Shown: positions 55,601-63,262 of the stretch, one piece after another
Position numbering within the stretch: position 1 is the stretch's first letter
Layout of the letters: every line of letters starts with the position of its first letter
Assembly: GCA_051294905.1 (NCBI GenBank)
Contig: CM119380.1
Span: forward strand, 22,878,001-22,942,000
DNA from: Botryllus schlosseri
Lineage: Eukaryota
Direction: 5' to 3'
DNA: 64,000 nucleotides
Position numbers and translations under genes: made by a program
Notes under the pieces: model-generated
What the model was told of the DNA's origin: nothing
The model's database searches: none
What the model saw: the letters and a program-made list of their open reading frames with translations, nothing else

Positions 55601-55775
55601 ACGAATCGAACATGATGAATTGATTGATGGCGCCCCCATGCGTATGTATAGACGCTTTTTATAATTAAATACGCTCAAAATTACATGCTGTCCGGCATTT
55701 GTTTCGCTGGCTGTTGACGGGATCACCGGAAAGAAATTCACACGGAACATCCTATATAAGTGTTCCCTAAACATA

Positions 55776-58700
55776 TCAAAAAGATTTCGAGGGTATCGCT
55801 GTGATGAGCTCCTGCAGTCTCTCTTCAGAAACGATGTCACTGTGTTCGAAAAACAGTTTTGATGGCACTGCGTACCTTAGGACGATTTAAGAACAACAAC
55901 TTACCCATTTTCATTAGACACTACGTCGTAAAACAAGCCAGGCCCGAAGCCATTGAAATTGGACGCTATTGTGAAAGTGTACGATCCGCAATCTAATTGA
56001 TGAATACACAGATACACGTTACACAAGCGATCAGTATTCCGTTGCGCGTGTCGCACCGGTCACAACGAAATCCAATAGTATTTTAAGGATCATAATGTGA
56101 CATCGGGAATTACACGCTGGCGGTTTACATAATTAACGATAAACATGTTATCCGCGACCACCTGACCTCATCTGTTTACTCGCAATGTTAGCGAATCCAC
56201 GGAATGAGTTGTTGGGTATCTACGGATAACGATGACGCCAAGAAGTATCCGTGTGTTTTACTCATCCGTTTGTTTTATTCATTACTATGTCGTGGAATAT
56301 TAACTAACACAATATTTAAACAGCACGTATCGGAGCCACACAGATGTTTACGGGAAATTGCATTTGCTTACTTTTCCACATAATCCACTCTCCAATCTGC
56401 ACTTCCGGGAGCGTTCTGTTGCAAATGATATCAAGACCTGAACAAGTCGGCCCGTCTATTCTGCATTCGCGTCGGTTGCGCGTTTTCTGAATTCGATGGC
56501 GCTGATAATCTTAACGTGGCTATACCGGGCGTACTATATACTGTCGTTTCCAACCTCGTATTGCAACACCTCTGGCTCGCATTCTCCGTCACCGCGTATG
56601 CCCAGCAGTTCCAGTCCAAGTCCTCCGAAGACACCATCGTTGACAGTGTAAGCTACTGGACCCCCGGATTCGCTCGCTGTAAATGAAGTACGATTGTAAT
56701 AGCCCGCGACGGTGATCAAGATACGTTGGTTTGCTGTAATTGTCGTAAGTATTGTCGAAGTAGTAGTAAATAATCATAGGCAAGGATGGTGCCGTTCGTA
56801 AGAAGTCGCTAATATGTGACCTAATGAACTGTCACTACAGGATTTCACATAGTTACCTGGCGAAATTCGAATGTATCTGGGGTGTCTCAGTGCCCACAAG
56901 GACCCCGCATTTGCACGCAGTAATATCGGGATTCTAAGAGAGTTTCTTTGGGGCTAGGGTAACACTTACCCAAACACATCATTTCCAATCTTATCAGACA
57001 TGGTTAAATCTGCTGCTGTACGGAAATACAGGCTAGGGCTGAGCACGCACAACAACGACCGAAATATATTGATGTGTCAAGCAAAATTCTCAAAAATCAG
57101 TGACATTTATGAGGTTGCAAGGCACTGCTTGGTTTCGTTTTGAATTTCCGTTCTTGCTATCACCGCGATGCAGCAATTGCAACATGTTAGCAAGTGTACA
57201 ATTGTATATGCAAGGAATTTTGATTATGGATCGTTCGACTACAGGAAAATTCCGGTATTTCACAACAATCTTCTCCAGACAGTCCCTACTCTAATGGAAC
57301 CTATGAATTATAATTATAATTATTACAGTTCGCATGCCGCATATAGCAACGCGAACCGACCGTCAGAACCATCCATAGTAACGCAATGATCAACTCATCA
57401 AAACTACGAAGTTAACAGCGGTTTGAACTCAAAAGGTATGTGATGTTATTCTATTGTCTCTCAACCGTTATGTTGTGGTTCCACGTGTCCATGGTGCTAA
57501 TTCCTAACTACTAACTGGTGATTTGCATATTGTGGCGATAAACCTCTCGATGGCAGGCCACGTTTCAAAGTGCTATTAATGTTATATAACATATATTTCG
57601 ATTGCAAGCTGTAATCATGCGATCCAATCCCCCAGCGGCTATCATTTTTCTCGTTTTAAGTCTGTGAAAGGATATTTCTGCTTTAATGTGGCGAGGATGT
57701 GTGATCGATGTCAATGATGTGTTTCGTCAAGTACAAATATACACGCCATATGTATGCTTCCAAGACTTCTTGCAAATATTCGTGGAAAATAGGCCATATC
57801 ACTATTCCGCCTTAACATCTGTCAAAGCCGAACTGTACAATCACAACATATTCGCCATTTTATCATCTATGCAATACTGCGCATATTTGGTATTCCAGAA
57901 TAAATTCTAAAACTGATACTTCAAATTAACGCAGTCAATAAAATCGTTTCATACGATTTCTTGCCGTCCAAAGACAATGTAATAAATTCACTTCCCACAC
58001 ACATACCGAAAATTGCAGGTTTTGAAATAGCGCGGATTCCAGTAACGAATTTGCTAATTAATCCGACGTAATACTGAGACGAGAATGACTTCCTCTCACC
58101 TCGTTTGGCAATTACGTTCGTTACCAATGTGAATACTGACGTCGCGAAGAACTTCCCAGGCTCTGCAATCACTTTCAAGTGGTTCTTCATTTCTTCTGAG
58201 AACATTGTATCCAAACCGTTGTTTATCGTATCCGCAAACTGCGATTGAATCACACACAAAAAAACGGAACTATGAATAAATCAATGCAATAATGAACCAT
58301 ACAATTACGAACGAAAGCGCGAGATCATAGATGCTCAAATTAGTAAATTTTGGCGATTGCTCTTATGAATATATATTTCTGACTGGGATTTAATGAGACA
58401 AATTTTACAGTGAGAAGTAAAATTGGTGATGCGAAATGTATACGAATACGTTGATTATATGCCAATAGAGTTTGCCACGGATCAGCTCTGTAGGTGGTTA
58501 GTAGTAATACCATATTTTATAGGAAGCCGAGACACATATTAGTATAATTTCAAACGAACACCAGTGGTTCGCGGAGTAATTATCAAGTGATATTTCGCAA
58601 CTTCGCGCTGTATAATCCGAACGTACCTCTTGAAATGACACCAGCTGCTCTTTGATACCACGGAATCCGCCCCCGATGTCAAGTATACTAAACTCGAACC

Positions 58701-61700
58701 CGAGAGTCGCTCCGTAATCGAATAATGTCTTGGCGTCCTTCAACGCCCGTGTATATGCTGACTTGTCAAAACATCCACTGCCGACGTGAAAACTGTATGA
58801 ATACAGATTCGGTTGATAAACTGTATCGCATCCAATTTACAGGAGAAATACCGGCCTACGACATGCGATTTTATGCACACAACGTTTGTGAATTCCAGTC
58901 AAATATGATCAAAACGCACCATATCCCAACTGTGTTCATCTCCAATTCCTTAGACAGCTTTATCAGACGCCTCGCCTCCGCCATGCCAGCTCCGAATCTC
59001 GAACTCAAGTCGATAGTTACCTGGGAGCTGAATGCTTTTATCCGTATCATGATTCTAAGGAAAATGAAGCTCTTCAATCCCAGTTAAAGGAGTCGTGCAA
59101 AATTTTCTGGCTGCTGCGACATACAATACTTTGGTGGAACAGCTCGCACTGTTTCTTTGCAACAAAATCCTTCATTAGGGGTACAATTCCAGCGAACAAA
59201 CAACGCAGTTTTCTTTAATCTCGATCCATTCTCCCGATCATTGTTATCATCAACGGATGGAAGGAAACACAACTTAGCAAAAACGCGATACGAACTAACC
59301 AGTATAGAGTATGGCGAACGTACAGGCGATCATTAGAAAATGCCCATTATGTCAAGTTGAGTTTCTAATAAACTTGCGAGTTTCTCGCGTTTCATCTGTA
59401 TCGGTTGCAATTGCAATTGACAAATCAACCGCGAAACTAAATCGGGGGTTCCCAGCCTGGGGTTTGTGATCCGTGCTATGGCCACGGCGATCCGTCAGTG
59501 GACTAGAATTAATAAAAAAACGAAATTGGGAATCGCTGATGGAATTAAAGGCATAGCTTTTATAGAAAAACCTACTCGCTGTTTGGATGATATTTTTTTA
59601 TCTTTCGCAATTCCTCTTCGCCATCCGCAACGGTCAGATTGACGTTTGTCTTTCTTGCATGTTCCAAATGCGATATTTGTTTGTTCGTGTTTGACAAAAC
59701 TATATCACGTGCATGTGCGCCTAGACTTAGAGCCAGGTCAATCTCGGACTGTGGATATAGAAATGCGTATACGTAAGTCGCTTTTAGACATTCAATTAGT
59801 ATTACTCATGGAAACACAAGAGGCCATACCAATATGTAGCTGTAGGTAAAATGACGTTGAAGTAGGCTATACAATAAATAAATAAGCTACATAAAGTTGC
59901 ATGAAACATAACGAGACCACGACAGAATTGTATTGGTATAGCTCATCGAGTACAGGGCCGTAACAGCACTTCGTCAGCCCCCCCCCCAAATGGCGATAAA
60001 CCGAACTTCTGGGGGGCTTCGCCCCCCAGACCCACCTTAGGCTGTTCGCTGTTTACCGCTACTTATCTGCTAAATTGGGTGTCCGTTTAGTGAGTCAGCT
60101 TTTCTCGCCTAAACGCGCATAGCGCGAGAAATTTCTATACTTCGTTACTGAATCGGGAAATATGATCGGGAATTGCATATACATTGCTATCAATATTTAT
60201 CCTCTCTGCACACGTAATCTGATTTACCGGTAGAGATGAGTGAGGTGTGTTTGAAAAGGTAGGACCCCTCCATAATAATTAAACATCTCCGGGTGTATAG
60301 GCTACCCGTTGGCAGGAACGAAACAGCCCCCCCCCCCCCAAAAAAAAAAAAACTTCCGAAACATCACGTTGTTCGCTTTTGCCACGAAATTATAGCTGTA
60401 CAGTTGGGTGAGCCAGCGCGAAGCGCGATCGTTTTCGATAATTCGTGATAAAATCGGTCAATAAGATCGGGAATTGAATATATTTTGCTATCAATTTCTT
60501 GTCCTCTCTGCTCACGTAATCAGATTGACCGGTAGAGCTGATTGAGTTGTCTTTGAAACTGTAGAGCCCGTAAATAATAATTGAACATCTTCGGGCGGGC
60601 GGACCCTTTGGTATGAATTCGTTACATGATGTTATTTCGTGACCCCCTGTCTGCTACATCAAAAAATATAGAATCGCCCAAATGTACTAAACTGAAGGAT
60701 CACACGATTTCAGATTGGTATTTATTCACTGGCATATAATTTTTTTCCTGTGGGGTGGTATTTGTCTCGTGAGGTTCAGATTGCCAAGACAGGAACATTC
60801 GGCGCCAGTCAATAAGGCGCCTATATGGACAATCAAACCTATATGTATTTTGCATATACGGCGAAGTTTTCGGTCAGCATGAGGGAAGTCCTTTACGGCC
60901 AAGGTTTTGTCGCTGCCGATCGTTCTGGCACACTTCTTGGAATCGCATGTTACATGGCCTAAAACTTTATATGTATTGGTGGTAATGGCTAACGCCGATA
61001 TGCCCATTTCTACATATCTTGCGTATTTTTCTTGGGGTTAGAGTACCCAATAGTCGAGATATTCAGCGACTTGAATTCGCGCCAAGCGCGCAAAATTTTT
61101 GAAAAATCTGCATAAATTTTGACAAAATAATCTATAATTTATGCTAATTCACGAAATAACTTCGGGCCCCCTTCGAGCTCGCCCCCCCAATTGGGGCGTT
61201 TGGAGTGCGGCAGTTACGGCCCTGATTGAGTATAATTAGATAATGTCAATCAATGACCATCGACATATATGGAGTTACATATATACAATTACGTATATTA
61301 CGCCACGTATTCACTGCGACATCACCAAGAAGAGATTTGCTGTTTCTCTTCGGTGCAATTTCGGTGCTCCTTTAATGGAGCTTTGATTTGGAAGAGGTAT
61401 TTCTACATAATGATTACATATTGAACATGATACAATTCGACTGGCATATACGTTTGTTACACCTTTTCCTTTATGTTGATGGCGAATATTATTGATTGCC
61501 TGACCTGGGTGGCGCAGTCCAATCCGATCCCATCGAGTAGCAAGTATTTCACCAGGGTTGGATGCGGCGCAGCCTTCACGGCATAATACGGCCGTACACG
61601 TGGCATCAGCCTATTCCAAGTTTGCAGCTGCGCTGCGGCATCGCCAATATCGCAAATCCAAAACGAATCATCCCAATTCTGTAAATGATGTTAGAGCGCG

Positions 61701-62268
61701 CGATAGGTATTAACCAGGACTCGCCACTTGATTAATCAGTAATCGGTGTTCAAATTCCATACGGTATACAGTGTATCGGTAATTTACGATGGGAATTCGT
61801 AGATTGGATGGCGATGCTATTCAACTCAAAGCAAGAGCAGATTATGCTATAATATATTATATATTGGCCATGCCTAGCAATGTCGATTAGGTACCGACAA
61901 GCCAAAAGTACTTTTCTTTTCTAATATAGACCAAATTTGACTAGAGAACATGGAATAAAAAACAAAAACAATGAAACAAACCACGTGAGTAACCAACTAT
62001 TATATGAAAGGATACAAATCCCTACTAAAGAATTCCAAATTCCTCGTTACTGACCCCGTGTGGCTATTGGAGTTATAAACATGCCAGACGAAAAATGGGT
62101 TATGCCAATGTGCATAAGGAAGGACGGAAATATTCGACAGGGAATGATTTATCCCCAAATCCACGAGGGAAAGAAGAGAGAAGGATAGTTGTCAGTAATT
62201 TCCATATACCTACAGTGTATCAAATGTGTCATCTCGCGGCCAACTTCGTTTGAAACCCTTCCTTCCAT
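55776..62268 (-). CDS. Ornithine decarboxylase / antizyme-inhibitor family (fold-type III PLP decarboxylase), divergent paralog
   Basis: Confident exons (-): 61678-61505 (DSFWICDIGD..PRVRPYYAVKA..GLDCATQ), 59748-59576, 59054-58920 (IRI..SRFGA), 58792-58627 (FHVGSGC..ILDIGGGF), 58238-58100 (VIAEPGKFF), 56676-56555 (YTVNDGVFG), 56486-56372 (GPTCSGLD), 55992-55905 (NCGSYT..SNFNGF), 55839-55776. Tentative N-terminal exons are 62268-62210 and 61940-61895. Confidence 0.88.
59953..61224. mobile_element. 1.27-kb non-autonomous hAT-like element in an intron of the ODC-like gene
   Basis: TIR CAGGGCCGTAAC...GTTACGGCCCTG. Flanks ATCGAGTA / ATTGAGTA match at 7/8 positions. An internal imperfect direct repeat spans about 60160-60260 and 60465-60565. 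Confidence 0.8.
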
Positions 62269-63262
62269 TATCAGCAACTACTGCATATCGAGAGTCAATG
62301 GAGTGTTTGCTTCTGTTTCAAGATGTCTTACGTAGCTATGGGAATGCGGGTGCTTATTTATGAATAGCGTGGTGGGATCATGATACTTTACGAACTGTAC
62401 TTCAAAGGCCCACTAATTTACCGCATCGGCTTTGAAAGACGTTTGCATGTTTGTTTTATATACACACAATATTGGATTTTCCTGCACTACGAGTAAGATT
62501 GTTTTTATATTCTCAGACAAAAGAACTTTTGCCGCTGCAGCTTGATCAACGACGGTACGCTTGAATGACTATATCAGTTTACTGACCCGACGTCCGTGTG
62601 AAGACGATGCGAAATACCTTGCTGCTTCCGTGACTGATTCTGTACGTGTGACCATGTTGCTTTTCCCAGTATTGAATAGTCAGCAATCTATACGCAAGTT
62701 GAAATGTCTGTTACAAATTGTGACGCAATCCATAGCATAGTACCGCTAAGATGAAGGCTATTCTCACCTGTCAGGATCGTTCACGGAGTCGAACAATCTG
62801 CACCTCCACTCAGCGAGCTTTGTAAACAAGAATGTGAGTGATTCACCGAATCGAGTCGTTCTTGACTGATTCATTAGAATCGAATAAGGGTCAAACTTCT
62901 TCATCCATATGGACGCAGTAAGCATAAAGTTATGAAATATATCATCATTGGTTTATATGTAATCGGGTTCATCAATTTTGAGCAAATATGACTTGTTATT
63001 TCTAATAACAATCACAGATTAGAAACTAGGTCACGTCGTGATATTGTAGAAAGGTTTTATCGTAAGCACGTGCTTGACGCACTGAGCTATATAAACGGCA
63101 GTCAGCTAGCGTCTGTTCTTTTGTCATATTTTGTACCATCGGAGGGCGTCTTCGTATAACTAAGGTCTGTTGTCGTGCGACTATAGAGTATGACATATGT
63201 CATACTCTATAGTGCGACTCATAAACTGATCGGACACTGAACCAGTATAGGACACGGACACT

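What the first reader, a model, noticed from the sequence alone, without database searches (positions are those of the whole stretch)
55776..61678. ODC-fold decarboxylase with intact PLP machinery but a rebuilt substrate pocket
Using mammalian ODC numbering, K69 (YYAVK), D88, R154, H197, the GGG loop, E274, C360 and Y389 are retained. Both acids that bind the ornithine delta-amine are lost: D361 becomes Ser (GPTCSGLD versus GPTCDGLD), and the specificity helix SFNCILYD becomes GLGLELLG (D332 to Gly, with a Glu at about 329). Other changes are R277K, K169R, C70A/N71A and ANP to SNT. In this family the specificity helix sets the substrate (Arg, Lys, Leu decarboxylases are known paralogs). This predicts a non-ornithine, possibly neutral or hydrophobic amino-acid decarboxylase making an unusual amine, or a new antizyme-inhibitor-like pseudoenzyme.
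Basis: partly seen in the sequence, partly recalled or inferred. Interest (0 to 1): 0.7.

Follow-up and report, generated by a model that had tools for sequence, protein, structure and literature searches.

The report
Sea-squirt ODC-like decarboxylase, altered pocket
This is a real, expressed and conserved sea-squirt gene for an enzyme built like ornithine decarboxylase that keeps its catalytic parts but has lost the residues that hold ornithine. It is one of about eight such copies, so it probably makes some other, still unknown amine.

Summary
RNA contigs from two studies and raw RNA-seq reads show all eight introns inside the stretch examined, exactly as predicted, including the 56676 and 56486 exons.

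K69, D88, E94, R154, G171, H197, S200, GGG, E274, C360, D364, G387, Y389 and F397 are kept. D361 is Ser and D332 is Gly, in a helix rebuilt with a 3-residue insert. C70A, N71A, K169R and R277K also hold.

A 70%-identical ortholog (an mRNA contig from another run) keeps the same pocket. Synonymous sites are saturated and dN is 0.22, which means strong purifying selection. Glu329 is Arg in the ortholog, so it is not a conserved feature.

The genome (an ascidian, about 495 Mb) also has one canonical ODC, one antizyme gene and about seven more ODC-like paralogs. With seven Styela clava "ODC1-like" proteins they form a tunicate-specific clade (100/99) nested in tunicate ODCs. This clade is separate from vertebrate ODC1, AZIN2 and leucine decarboxylase.

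Across the clade the catalytic and cofactor residues are invariant, while position 361 and the helix vary. Best reading: an active PLP decarboxylase with a non-ornithine, probably neutral or hydrophobic, substrate (about 0.6). The substrate is unknown. It is a new variant of a known kind.

The parts
62587..62655 (-). Exon 1 (start codon at 62655-62653; 23 codons, phase 0).
   Evidence: tblastn of the ortholog P0003 N-terminus gives 61% identity. An ATG and a GTCAGT donor follow 62587. This exon was not covered by the reads laid.
61505..61678 (-). Exon 2. It holds the Schiff-base lysine motif YYAVKAAPH (K58 here = ODC K69; codons 61588-61562) and D88 in LDCATQ.
   Evidence: Pfam PF02784 E 4e-8. 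The joint 59748>61505 appears in X1, X3 and X17.
59576..59748 (-). Exon 3. It holds LSNTNKQ (ODC ANPCKQ) and the region that corresponds to the antizyme-binding element (ODC 117-140).
   Evidence: PF02784 E 4.4e-11. Joints are on both sides.
58920..59054 (-). Exon 4. It holds R154 (IMIRIK) and K169R (SSRFGA).
   Evidence: Joints 59054>59576 and 58792>58920.
58627..58792 (-). Exon 5. It holds H197/S200 (FHVGSGC) and the Gly loop (DIGGGF).
   Evidence: PF02784 E 8e-16. PDB phmmer hits human ODC at 4.8e-14. Joints.
58100..58238 (-). Exon 6. It holds E274 and R277K (IAEPGKF).
   Evidence: Joints 58238>58627 and 56676>58100.
56555..56676 (-). Exon 7. It holds the rebuilt specificity helix NDGVFGGLGLELLGIRGDGECEP (residues 298-320; codons 56641-56573). 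Y323F, S325G, F326L, N327G, C328L and D332G are changed, and there is a 3-residue insert.
   Evidence: The joints 56676>58100 and 56486>56555 appear in X1, X3 and raw reads of X17.
56372..56486 (-). Exon 8. It holds GPTCSGLD (codons 56453-56430): C360 is kept, D361 is Ser, and D364 is kept.
   Evidence: PF00278 E 1.3e-7.. Joints.
55905..55992 (-). Exon 9. It holds G387/Y389 (NCGSYTF, spanning the exon 8/9 junction) and F397/N398 (SNFNGF).
   Evidence: Joints 55992>56372 and 55839>55905.
55776..55839 (-). Exon 10. It is the short C-terminal tail, ending at the TGA stop at 55778-55776. There is no long ODC-type C-terminal tail.
   Evidence: The 65-nt intron 55840-55904 is confirmed by X1, X3 and X17.

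Best explanation
The gene encodes a cytosolic, PLP-dependent amino-acid alpha-decarboxylase of the ODC (alanine-racemase-fold, group IV) type. It forms a head-to-tail homodimer and is catalytically competent, but it no longer uses ornithine.

Mechanism, inferred from the family:
- Lys58 (ODC K69) carries PLP as an internal aldimine.
- H186, S189, G224-226, E265, K268 and Y368-equivalent residues hold the cofactor.
- The substrate forms the external aldimine and CO2 leaves.
- Cys341 (ODC C360) from the other subunit protonates C-alpha to release an amine.

What differs is the distal side-chain pocket. D361 is Ser. D332 is Gly in a helix that is 3 residues longer and rich in Gly and Leu. C70 and N71 are both Ala, and Y323 is Phe. 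Almost all of these changes are to smaller or apolar residues and remove charge. The preferred substrate is therefore most likely a neutral, probably bulky hydrophobic or aromatic, amino acid or amino-acid derivative, which would give a monoamine rather than putrescine.

The gene belongs to a tunicate-specific radiation of ODC duplicates: about 7-8 copies in this genome and at least 7 in Styela clava. The catalytic core is frozen across these copies, while position 361 and the specificity helix differ between subclades. That pattern suggests several substrates across the family.

Shown here: gene structure, expression, splicing, residue pattern, purifying selection and phylogeny. Inferred: catalytic activity, dimer and substrate class.
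For: 1. The gene is transcribed and spliced exactly as modelled.
2. The ortholog P0003 is 70% identical and comes from an mRNA-sized Logan contig. Between the two, pS is 0.82 (saturated) and dN is 0.22. The ortholog keeps GGLGL..LG, GPTCSG, AVKAAPH and K277.
3. Of 19 alignable ODC 'critical' positions (the list is quoted in PMC5518511 from Ivanov et al. 2010), K69, D88, E94, R154, G171, H197, G235-237 and C360 are identical in all 13 clade members. That is 10/19 against 46/331 background columns, p = 1.5e-4. Some of the exceptions come from imperfect paralog models.
4. Position 361 is S/A/I/G/D across the clade, and the helix differs in length and sequence.
5. The AF2 model of the ortholog has pLDDT 92.7 and pTM 0.91. 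Its best PDB match is human ODC at TM 0.88.
6. The homodimer prediction scored 0.88 against a best control of 0.29. The three runs agree in at least 98% of their contacts and partner pLDDT is 90. The pass mark was reached by 21 of 30 proteins solved as homodimers and 0 of 23 solved as single chains. K58 of one chain touches T339, F376 and N377 of the other, which is the ODC-type shared active site.
7. A separate canonical ODC exists in the genome.
8. There is precedent for an ODC paralog that decarboxylates a neutral amino acid: mouse Gm853 leucine decarboxylase (PMC6313458, PMC7671201).
9. Variants in RNA are 9 synonymous and 10 non-synonymous, and none falls at a key residue.
Against: - No enzymatic data exist, and the substrate class is inferred from residue chemistry alone, without coordinates.
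- By the Ivanov et al. criterion, a homolog lacking D332 and D361 counts as a likely inactive, regulatory form.
- Three of the residues reported as important for ODC dimerisation (K169, R277, D332) are changed. K169R and R277K are conservative.
- The dimer prediction may reflect memory of solved ODC dimers, as the tool itself warns.
- Mouse LDC keeps both Asp residues, so the analogy is imperfect.
- A conserved Glu (E317) shortly after the helix might still supply an acid to the pocket.
- Expression in the bulk RNA run examined is modest: depth of a few reads with 6% of the run read.
Confidence: 0.6

Rival explanations
1. It is an antizyme-inhibitor-like (or otherwise regulatory) pseudoenzyme. 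It has lost ornithine decarboxylation and acts by binding the genome's antizyme or the canonical ODC, as vertebrate AZIN1/2 do and as has been proposed for many independently arisen ODC homologs.
For: - D332 and D361, two of the residues used to call ODC homologs inactive, are lost (criterion quoted in PMC5518511 and PMC5574924 from Ivanov et al. 2010).
- The genome has an antizyme gene at C15:14.93 Mb.
- The segment corresponding to the antizyme-binding element is recognisably conserved.
- Inactive ODC homologs arise recurrently (PMC5574924).
- At least one paralog (C8:25.58 Mb) really has lost H197, the Gly loop and E274.
Against: - A regulator has no need for K69, C360, D88, E94, R154, H197, the Gly loop and E274, yet these are invariant across 13 old, otherwise about 40%-identical clade members.
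- Seven to eight inhibitors for one antizyme gene is hard to rationalise.
- The variable positions are exactly the substrate-distal ones.
- The clade is not related to vertebrate AZIN2 or LDC.
- The predicted homodimer is ODC-like, whereas, from my own knowledge, AZIN1 is monomeric.
Confidence: 0.2
2. It is still a basic-amino-acid decarboxylase (ornithine, lysine or arginine), acting as a low-affinity or tissue-specific second ODC. Another acid, such as E317 (or D315 in the window copy), would replace D332/D361 in the remodelled loop.
For: - All catalytic residues are present.
- A Glu a few residues after the helix is conserved in the window protein, its ortholog and the Styela clade.
- In the chlorella-virus arginine decarboxylase, specificity is set by changes in this same helix (from my own knowledge; the fold matches 2nv9/2nva at TM 0.85).
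Against: - D361 is unambiguously aligned and is Ser here (GPTC-S-G). Elsewhere in the clade it is Ala, Ile or Gly.
- From my own knowledge of T. brucei ODC mutagenesis, D361A raises Km for ornithine by orders of magnitude.
- D315 is Gln and E308 is Arg in the ortholog.
- The other pocket changes are to Gly, Ala and Leu.
- A canonical ODC is present.
Confidence: 0.1
3. It is a decaying or non-functional duplicate (a pseudogene in the making) of a tandemly amplified family.
For: The family is large, partly tandem (C10 22.51/22.53 Mb; C8 25.50-25.58 Mb), and has at least one degenerate member.
Against: - The reading frame is intact over 10 exons with canonical splice sites.
- It is spliced in RNA of several studies.
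- dN is 0.22 with saturated synonymous sites against a distant ortholog.
- Catalytic residues are invariant.
Confidence: 0.03

Closest known systems
Eukaryotic ornithine decarboxylase (ODC1; EC 4.1.1.17; e.g. human 1D7K/2OO0, T. brucei 1F3T)
   Same: - Same two-domain fold (TM 0.88 to 2oo0_A for the ortholog model).
- Same Pfam domains.
- Same intron positions as the genome's own ODC: exon lengths 173/135/166 are shared.
- Same Schiff-base Lys, PLP ligands and Cys360.
- ODC-like predicted dimer.
   Different: - 34-36% identity only.
- D361S and D332G, with the helix 3 residues longer and rich in Gly and Leu.
- C70A, N71A, Y323F, K169R and R277K.
- No long C-terminal tail.
- Belongs to a separate, tunicate-specific clade, while a canonical ODC exists elsewhere in the genome.
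Mouse leucine decarboxylase (Gm853/LDC; P0403)
   Same: It is an ODC paralog that keeps the catalytic machinery, does not use ornithine, and makes a neutral monoamine (PMC6313458). Both have Gly/Leu-type replacements at ODC positions 327-328 of the helix.
   Different: - LDC keeps the equivalents of D332 and D361 (R309-D310 and C338-D339; PMC7671201).
- It arose within vertebrates next to AZIN2.
- A tree forcing it together with the ascidian clade is rejected (p-AU 0.013).
Antizyme inhibitors AZIN1/AZIN2 and the 'recurrently emerging inactive ODC homologs' of Ivanov et al. 2010
   Same: They are lineage-specific ODC duplicates lacking residues needed for ornithine decarboxylation. The host genome has an antizyme gene.
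   Different: - Here the cofactor-binding and catalytic residues are all conserved and only substrate-side residues changed.
- The clade is independent of vertebrate AZIN2.
- AZIN1 could not be included in the tree, and antizyme binding was not tested.
Styela clava 'ornithine decarboxylase 1-like' proteins (P0064, P0269-P0273; NCBI automatic names)
   Same: - Same tunicate ODC-like clade (100/99).
- Same K-[AV]-A-P-[HY] motif after the lysine.
- Rebuilt helix with an insert and a conserved Gly-Glu after it.
   Different: - Only about 40% identical.
- They form a sister radiation, not orthologs of the window gene.
- Most keep Asp at 361 but change D364 to Arg or Lys.
- They are uncharacterised.

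Membership tests
Group IV (alanine-racemase-fold) PLP decarboxylases, ODC subfamily | N-terminal PLP-binding barrel (PF02784) plus C-terminal sheet domain (PF00278) | tested here: met
   Exon-wise Pfam hits: PF02784 at E 4e-8, 4.4e-11 and 8e-16; PF00278 at 1.3e-7. Both domains are precomputed on the ortholog P0003.
Group IV (alanine-racemase-fold) PLP decarboxylases, ODC subfamily | Schiff-base lysine and PLP ligands (K69, D88, R154, H197, S200, G235-237, E274, R277, Y389) | tested here: met
   All are present. R277 is Lys, which is conservative.
Group IV (alanine-racemase-fold) PLP decarboxylases, ODC subfamily | Catalytic Cys360 supplied by the partner subunit of a head-to-tail homodimer | tested here: met
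   C360 is present. The homodimer prediction for the ortholog scored 0.88 against a best control of 0.29, with K58 against residues 339/376/377 of the other chain. This is a prediction only and may reflect solved ODC dimers.
Group IV (alanine-racemase-fold) PLP decarboxylases, ODC subfamily | Overall fold | tested here: met
   AF2 model of the ortholog: pLDDT 92.7. Foldseek: TM 0.88 to human ODC and 0.85 to PBCV-1 arginine decarboxylase.
Ornithine decarboxylase proper (EC 4.1.1.17) | Asp361 and Asp332 binding the delta-amino group of ornithine | tested here: not met
   D361 is Ser and D332 is Gly in the window protein and its ortholog.
Ornithine decarboxylase proper (EC 4.1.1.17) | Orthology to canonical ODC | tested here: not met
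   The canonical ODC of this genome is at C10:22.277-22.282 Mb and groups with the Styela, Ciona and Phallusia ODCs. The window gene sits in a separate 16-member clade.
Ornithine decarboxylase proper (EC 4.1.1.17) | Decarboxylation of L-ornithine | not testable with these tools
   Needs an enzyme assay.
Antizyme inhibitor (AZIN) | Loss of PLP binding or catalysis with retention of the fold | tested here: not met
   Catalytic and PLP residues are retained and invariant in the clade.
Antizyme inhibitor (AZIN) | Binds antizyme more tightly than ODC does | not tested
A pull-down is needed.
Antizyme inhibitor (AZIN) | Orthology to vertebrate AZIN1/AZIN2 | tested here: not met
   AZIN2 groups with vertebrate ODC1/LDC (99/95), while the window gene lies inside the tunicate clade (99/97).
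Leucine decarboxylase (Gm853/LDC) | Orthology to mammalian LDC | tested here: not met
   Separate clades. The constrained tree is rejected: delta lnL 48.9, p-AU 0.013. The group was named after the tree had been seen.
Leucine decarboxylase (Gm853/LDC) | Decarboxylates L-leucine but not ornithine or lysine | not testable with these tools
   Needs an enzyme assay.

The most novel reading that the evidence does not exclude
Stolidobranch ascidians evolved, from their ODC, a whole family of neofunctionalised PLP decarboxylases. This genome has 7-8 copies and Styela clava at least 7. Their rebuilt and mutually different pockets would act on different non-basic amino acids or amino-acid derivatives. 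That would give these animals a private set of biogenic monoamines for signalling, defence or natural-product synthesis. It would be a much larger parallel to the single mammalian leucine decarboxylase, and the window gene would be the member with the smallest, most apolar pocket residues (Gly/Leu helix, Ser361, Ala70/71).
Probability: 0.35. Interest if true: 0.7.

Novelty: new variant of a known kind. Interest (0 to 1): 0.55.

Why it matters
ODC duplicates are usually filed either as ODC or as inactive antizyme inhibitors. The only animal exception with a proven new substrate is mouse leucine decarboxylase.

Here an entire, old, expressed gene family keeps the chemistry and changes only the substrate-facing residues. 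That is the signature of enzymes exploring new substrates. If so, automatic names such as 'ornithine decarboxylase 1-like' are misleading for these genes. Counting them as polyamine-synthesis capacity in tunicates would be wrong. They would also point to unknown amine metabolites in the closest invertebrate relatives of vertebrates.

The family offers natural variants for learning how the ODC specificity helix and residue 361 set substrate choice. The question is directly testable with recombinant protein.

Tried and rejected
- A single-exon query against the representative library mostly returned fragments. It was useful only because it found the ortholog P0003 and some full-length references.
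- The window's own spliced protein could not be given to the structure, complex or homology tools without typing a long sequence. The 70%-identical ortholog P0003 was used as a proxy for folding and dimer prediction.
- No atomic coordinates are returned by the tools. Pocket volume, the position of E317 and docking could therefore not be examined.
- dS against the ortholog is saturated, so no numerical dN/dS is given.
- AZIN1, Xenopus ODC2 and the viral arginine decarboxylase could not be added to the tree because no sequence files were available. The viral enzyme was compared by fold only.
- Paralog gene models are partial. The helix exon was not found for C10:22.53 Mb or C8:25.50 Mb. The last exon was mis-chosen for C10:22.51 Mb. 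C8:25.50 and C8:25.57 Mb were merged on the untested assumption that they are one gene with a 57-kb intron.
- Literature searches for ODC paralogs in tunicates found nothing relevant.
- Rfam found nothing in the intron-2 repeat.
- The pseudogene reading was rejected.
- Orthology to LDC or AZIN2 was rejected.
- The organism is probably a styelid such as Botryllus schlosseri. The evidence is 16 large contigs, 495 Mb, and a canonical ODC nearest to Styela's, compared with about 500 Mb and 16 chromosome-scale scaffolds reported in PMC12448946. This was not verified.

Full report
**What is there**

The region holds a multi-exon gene on the minus strand. Stop-free frames containing ODC motifs hit Pfam PF02784 (Orn_Arg_deC_N) and PF00278 (Orn_DAP_Arg_deC) exon by exon, and they hit human ODC in the PDB.

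A search of 1.8 billion representatives with one exon found P0003. This is a 410-aa protein from a 1498-nt Logan contig of run SRR32906212, which is the size of an mRNA. It matches every exon at 57-80% identity.

Using P0003 as a guide and requiring GT..AG boundaries, I obtained a 10-exon model:
- 62655-62587
- 61678-61505
- 59748-59576
- 59054-58920
- 58792-58627
- 58238-58100
- 56676-56555
- 56486-56372
- 55992-55905
- 55839-55776

The model encodes 414 aa. Exon 1 (23 codons) lies about 900 bases upstream and was missed.

**Expression and splicing**

Contigs of two probable RNA runs from different studies (X1, X3) and raw reads of a bulk RNA-seq run (X17) were laid on 55750-61749.
- Depth is confined to the predicted exons.
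- All eight introns in the stretch appear as joints with CT..AC ends at exactly the predicted bases. One 2614-nt contig in X1 crosses them in series.
- The short last intron (55840-55904) is also confirmed.
- Exon 1 was outside the stretch laid and rests on homology and a consensus donor only.
- Nineteen exonic differences between RNA and genome are 9 synonymous and 10 non-synonymous. None is at a catalytic or pocket residue.

**The residues**

The protein was aligned to a 461-aa mammalian ODC whose K69 lies in FYAVKCND.
- Kept: K69, D88, E94, R154, G171, H197, S200, G235-237, E274, C360, D364, G387, Y389, F397 and N398.
- Changed: C70A, N71A, K169R, R277K, Y323F, S325G, F326L, N327G, C328L, D332G and D361S. 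The motif ANPCKQ becomes SNTNKQ.

Three refinements follow.
1. The specificity helix is 3 residues longer than in ODC. D332 falls on Gly314 in both alignments I made, but the exact pairing of helix residues is uncertain.
2. The 'Glu at about 329' (E308) is Arg in the ortholog, and the Asp that follows Gly314 in the window (D315) is Gln there. Neither is a conserved substitute acid.
3. A Glu slightly further on (E317, about ODC position 335) is conserved in the window protein, the ortholog and the Styela relatives. I could not place it relative to the pocket because the tools return no coordinates. This is the main caveat to 'both acids lost'.

**Is it functional?**

Against P0003 the protein is 70% identical. 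Synonymous differences are saturated (pS 0.82), while dN is 0.22. The two genes have therefore been separated for a long time under strong purifying selection. The rebuilt pocket (AVKAAPH, GGLGL..LG, GPTCSG, K277) is shared.

An AlphaFold model of P0003 is confident (pLDDT 92.7, pTM 0.91). It superposes on human ODC at TM 0.88 and on T. brucei ODC and the chlorella-virus arginine decarboxylase at about 0.85.

A homodimer prediction scored 0.88 against 0.29 for the best of three controls.
- The three runs agree in at least 98% of their contacts and partner pLDDT is 90.
- The pass mark was reached by 21 of 30 proteins solved as homodimers and by 0 of 23 solved as single chains.
- The interface puts K58 (K69) of one chain against T339, F376 and N377 (T359, F397, N398) of the other. 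It includes the helix insert (309-312) and the GPTCSGID loop. This is the ODC-type shared active site.
- As the tool warns, this may reflect memory of solved ODC dimers. It shows likeness, not binding.

**The genomic and evolutionary setting**

Earlier notes of this scan call the genome a sea squirt, and my tree agrees. A whole-genome search found ODC-like exons at nine places:
- C10: 22.28 Mb, 22.51 Mb, 22.53 Mb and the window at 22.93 Mb
- C8: 25.50, 25.57, 25.58 and 25.91 Mb
- C7: 16.23 Mb

I fetched them and built partial models.
- C10:22.28 Mb is the canonical ODC. It is best matched by Phallusia ODC and has FYAIKCNP, GSFNCLFYDH and GPTCDGLD.
- All the others are divergent ODC-like genes with the same intron positions as the ODC (exon lengths 173/135/166/139). 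They are therefore DNA-level duplicates, not retrocopies.
- C8:25.50 and C8:25.57 Mb may be one gene.
- C8:25.58 Mb has lost H197, the Gly loop and E274. It is a pseudoenzyme or a pseudogene.

Styela clava has at least seven related proteins, named automatically 'ornithine decarboxylase 1-like'.

A maximum-likelihood tree of 59 sequences (LG+C20) gives the following.
- The window gene pairs with P0003 (100/99).
- That pair lies within a group of the genome's paralogs (100/98).
- That group lies within a 16-member ODC-like clade that includes the Styela genes (100/99).
- That clade lies inside a tunicate clade (99/97) with the canonical ODCs of Ciona, Phallusia, Clavelina, Styela and this genome.
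- Vertebrate ODC1, AZIN2 and leucine decarboxylase (mouse Gm853 = P0403) form their own clade (99/95).
- Forcing the ascidian clade together with LDC costs 48.9 log-likelihood units (p-AU 0.013).

The family therefore arose within tunicates, independently of AZIN and LDC. No member was seen among the Ciona, Phallusia or Clavelina hits. That suggests, but does not prove, a stolidobranch origin.

**The pattern across the family**

I compared 13 clade members at the ODC 'critical' positions listed in PMC5518511 (after Ivanov et al. 2010).
- K69, D88, E94, R154, G171, H197, G235-237 and C360 are identical in every member. That is 10 of 19 positions against 46 of 331 background columns (p = 1.5e-4). 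Several of the apparent exceptions are artefacts of my partial models.
- Position 361 is Ser, Ala, Ile, Gly or Asp.
- The 325-335 helix differs in sequence and length between subclades.
- All members replace C70-N71 by [AVS]-[AG].

A frozen catalytic core with a variable substrate-distal pocket is what one expects of enzymes diverging in substrate. It is not what one expects of regulators that only need to bind antizyme.

**Interpretation**

I commit to an active, homodimeric PLP-dependent alpha-decarboxylase that no longer prefers ornithine (0.6). The replacements are almost all to smaller or apolar residues: Gly at 325, 327 and 332; Leu at 326, 328 and 331; Ala at 70 and 71; Phe at 323; Ser at 361. 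The pocket should therefore be larger and uncharged, which points to a neutral, probably bulky hydrophobic or aromatic, amino acid or derivative. This last step is an inference from residue chemistry only.

The mouse leucine decarboxylase shows that an ODC paralog can take a neutral substrate (PMC6313458). However, it keeps both Asp residues (PMC7671201), so the ascidian solution is different and more radical.

Rivals:
- **AZIN-like regulator (0.2).** This is favoured by the Ivanov criterion and by the presence of a single antizyme gene. It is disfavoured by the conservation pattern and the number of paralogs.
- **Residual basic-amino-acid decarboxylase using E317 (0.1).**
- **Decaying duplicate (0.03).** This is effectively excluded.

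**Novelty**

I found no paper on ODC paralogs in tunicates. The relatives in databases carry only automatic names. The kind of event, an ODC duplicate with altered function, is known from AZIN1/2, LDC and the recurrent inactive homologs of Ivanov et al. I therefore rate this as a new variant of a known kind.

Three things are new:
- the combination of an intact core with loss of both substrate acids;
- conservation of that state between distant species;
- the size of the radiation.

Enzyme assays, antizyme pull-downs and a coordinate-level structure would settle the function. None could be run here.

Noticed in passing
window 59950-61350 (intron 2 of the gene): A dispersed repeat with units of about 300 nt, two of them in tandem here (60115-60293 and 60416-60595, 78-82% alike). 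A 301-nt probe gave 3828 first-look candidates on all 16 large contigs at about 80% identity. RNA-derived contigs cover it at depths in the thousands. There is no Rfam match.
   Followed up: partly
G000 C8:25577327-25586167 (loci L019/L020): An ODC-like paralog that keeps GPTCDGFD but has lost H197 (PGSSC), the Gly loop (NIREEF) and E274/R277 (MSQTGT). It is a pseudoenzyme or a pseudogene, unlike its sisters.
   Followed up: partly
Proteins P0281 and P0162 (Logan contigs; sister to the ODC-like clade in the tree): These tunicate-clade ODC homologs keep K69 and D332 (FYDH) but have C360 replaced by Arg or Leu and D361 by Thr (GPARTN, GPALTN). They are better candidates for a tunicate antizyme-inhibitor-like protein than the window gene.
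   Followed up: no
G000 C10:22.51 and 22.53 Mb; C8:25.50-25.58 and 25.91 Mb; C7:16.23 Mb: The ODC-like paralogs lie partly in clusters on the same chromosomes as the canonical ODC (C10:22.28 Mb) and the window gene (C10:22.93 Mb). C8:25.50 and C8:25.57 Mb hold complementary exon sets and may be one gene with an intron of about 57 kb.
   Followed up: partly
G000 C15:14929753-14930013 (L026): This is the only match to the antizyme family PF02100 in the genome (E 1.7e-18). It is the natural partner for any antizyme-binding test.
   Followed up: no
window 55832-61594 (exons): There are 19 exonic differences between the assembly and RNA-derived sequences of the same species label, in 1245 coding bases. 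This fits the high heterozygosity reported for colonial ascidians. Ten are non-synonymous but conservative.
   Followed up: yes
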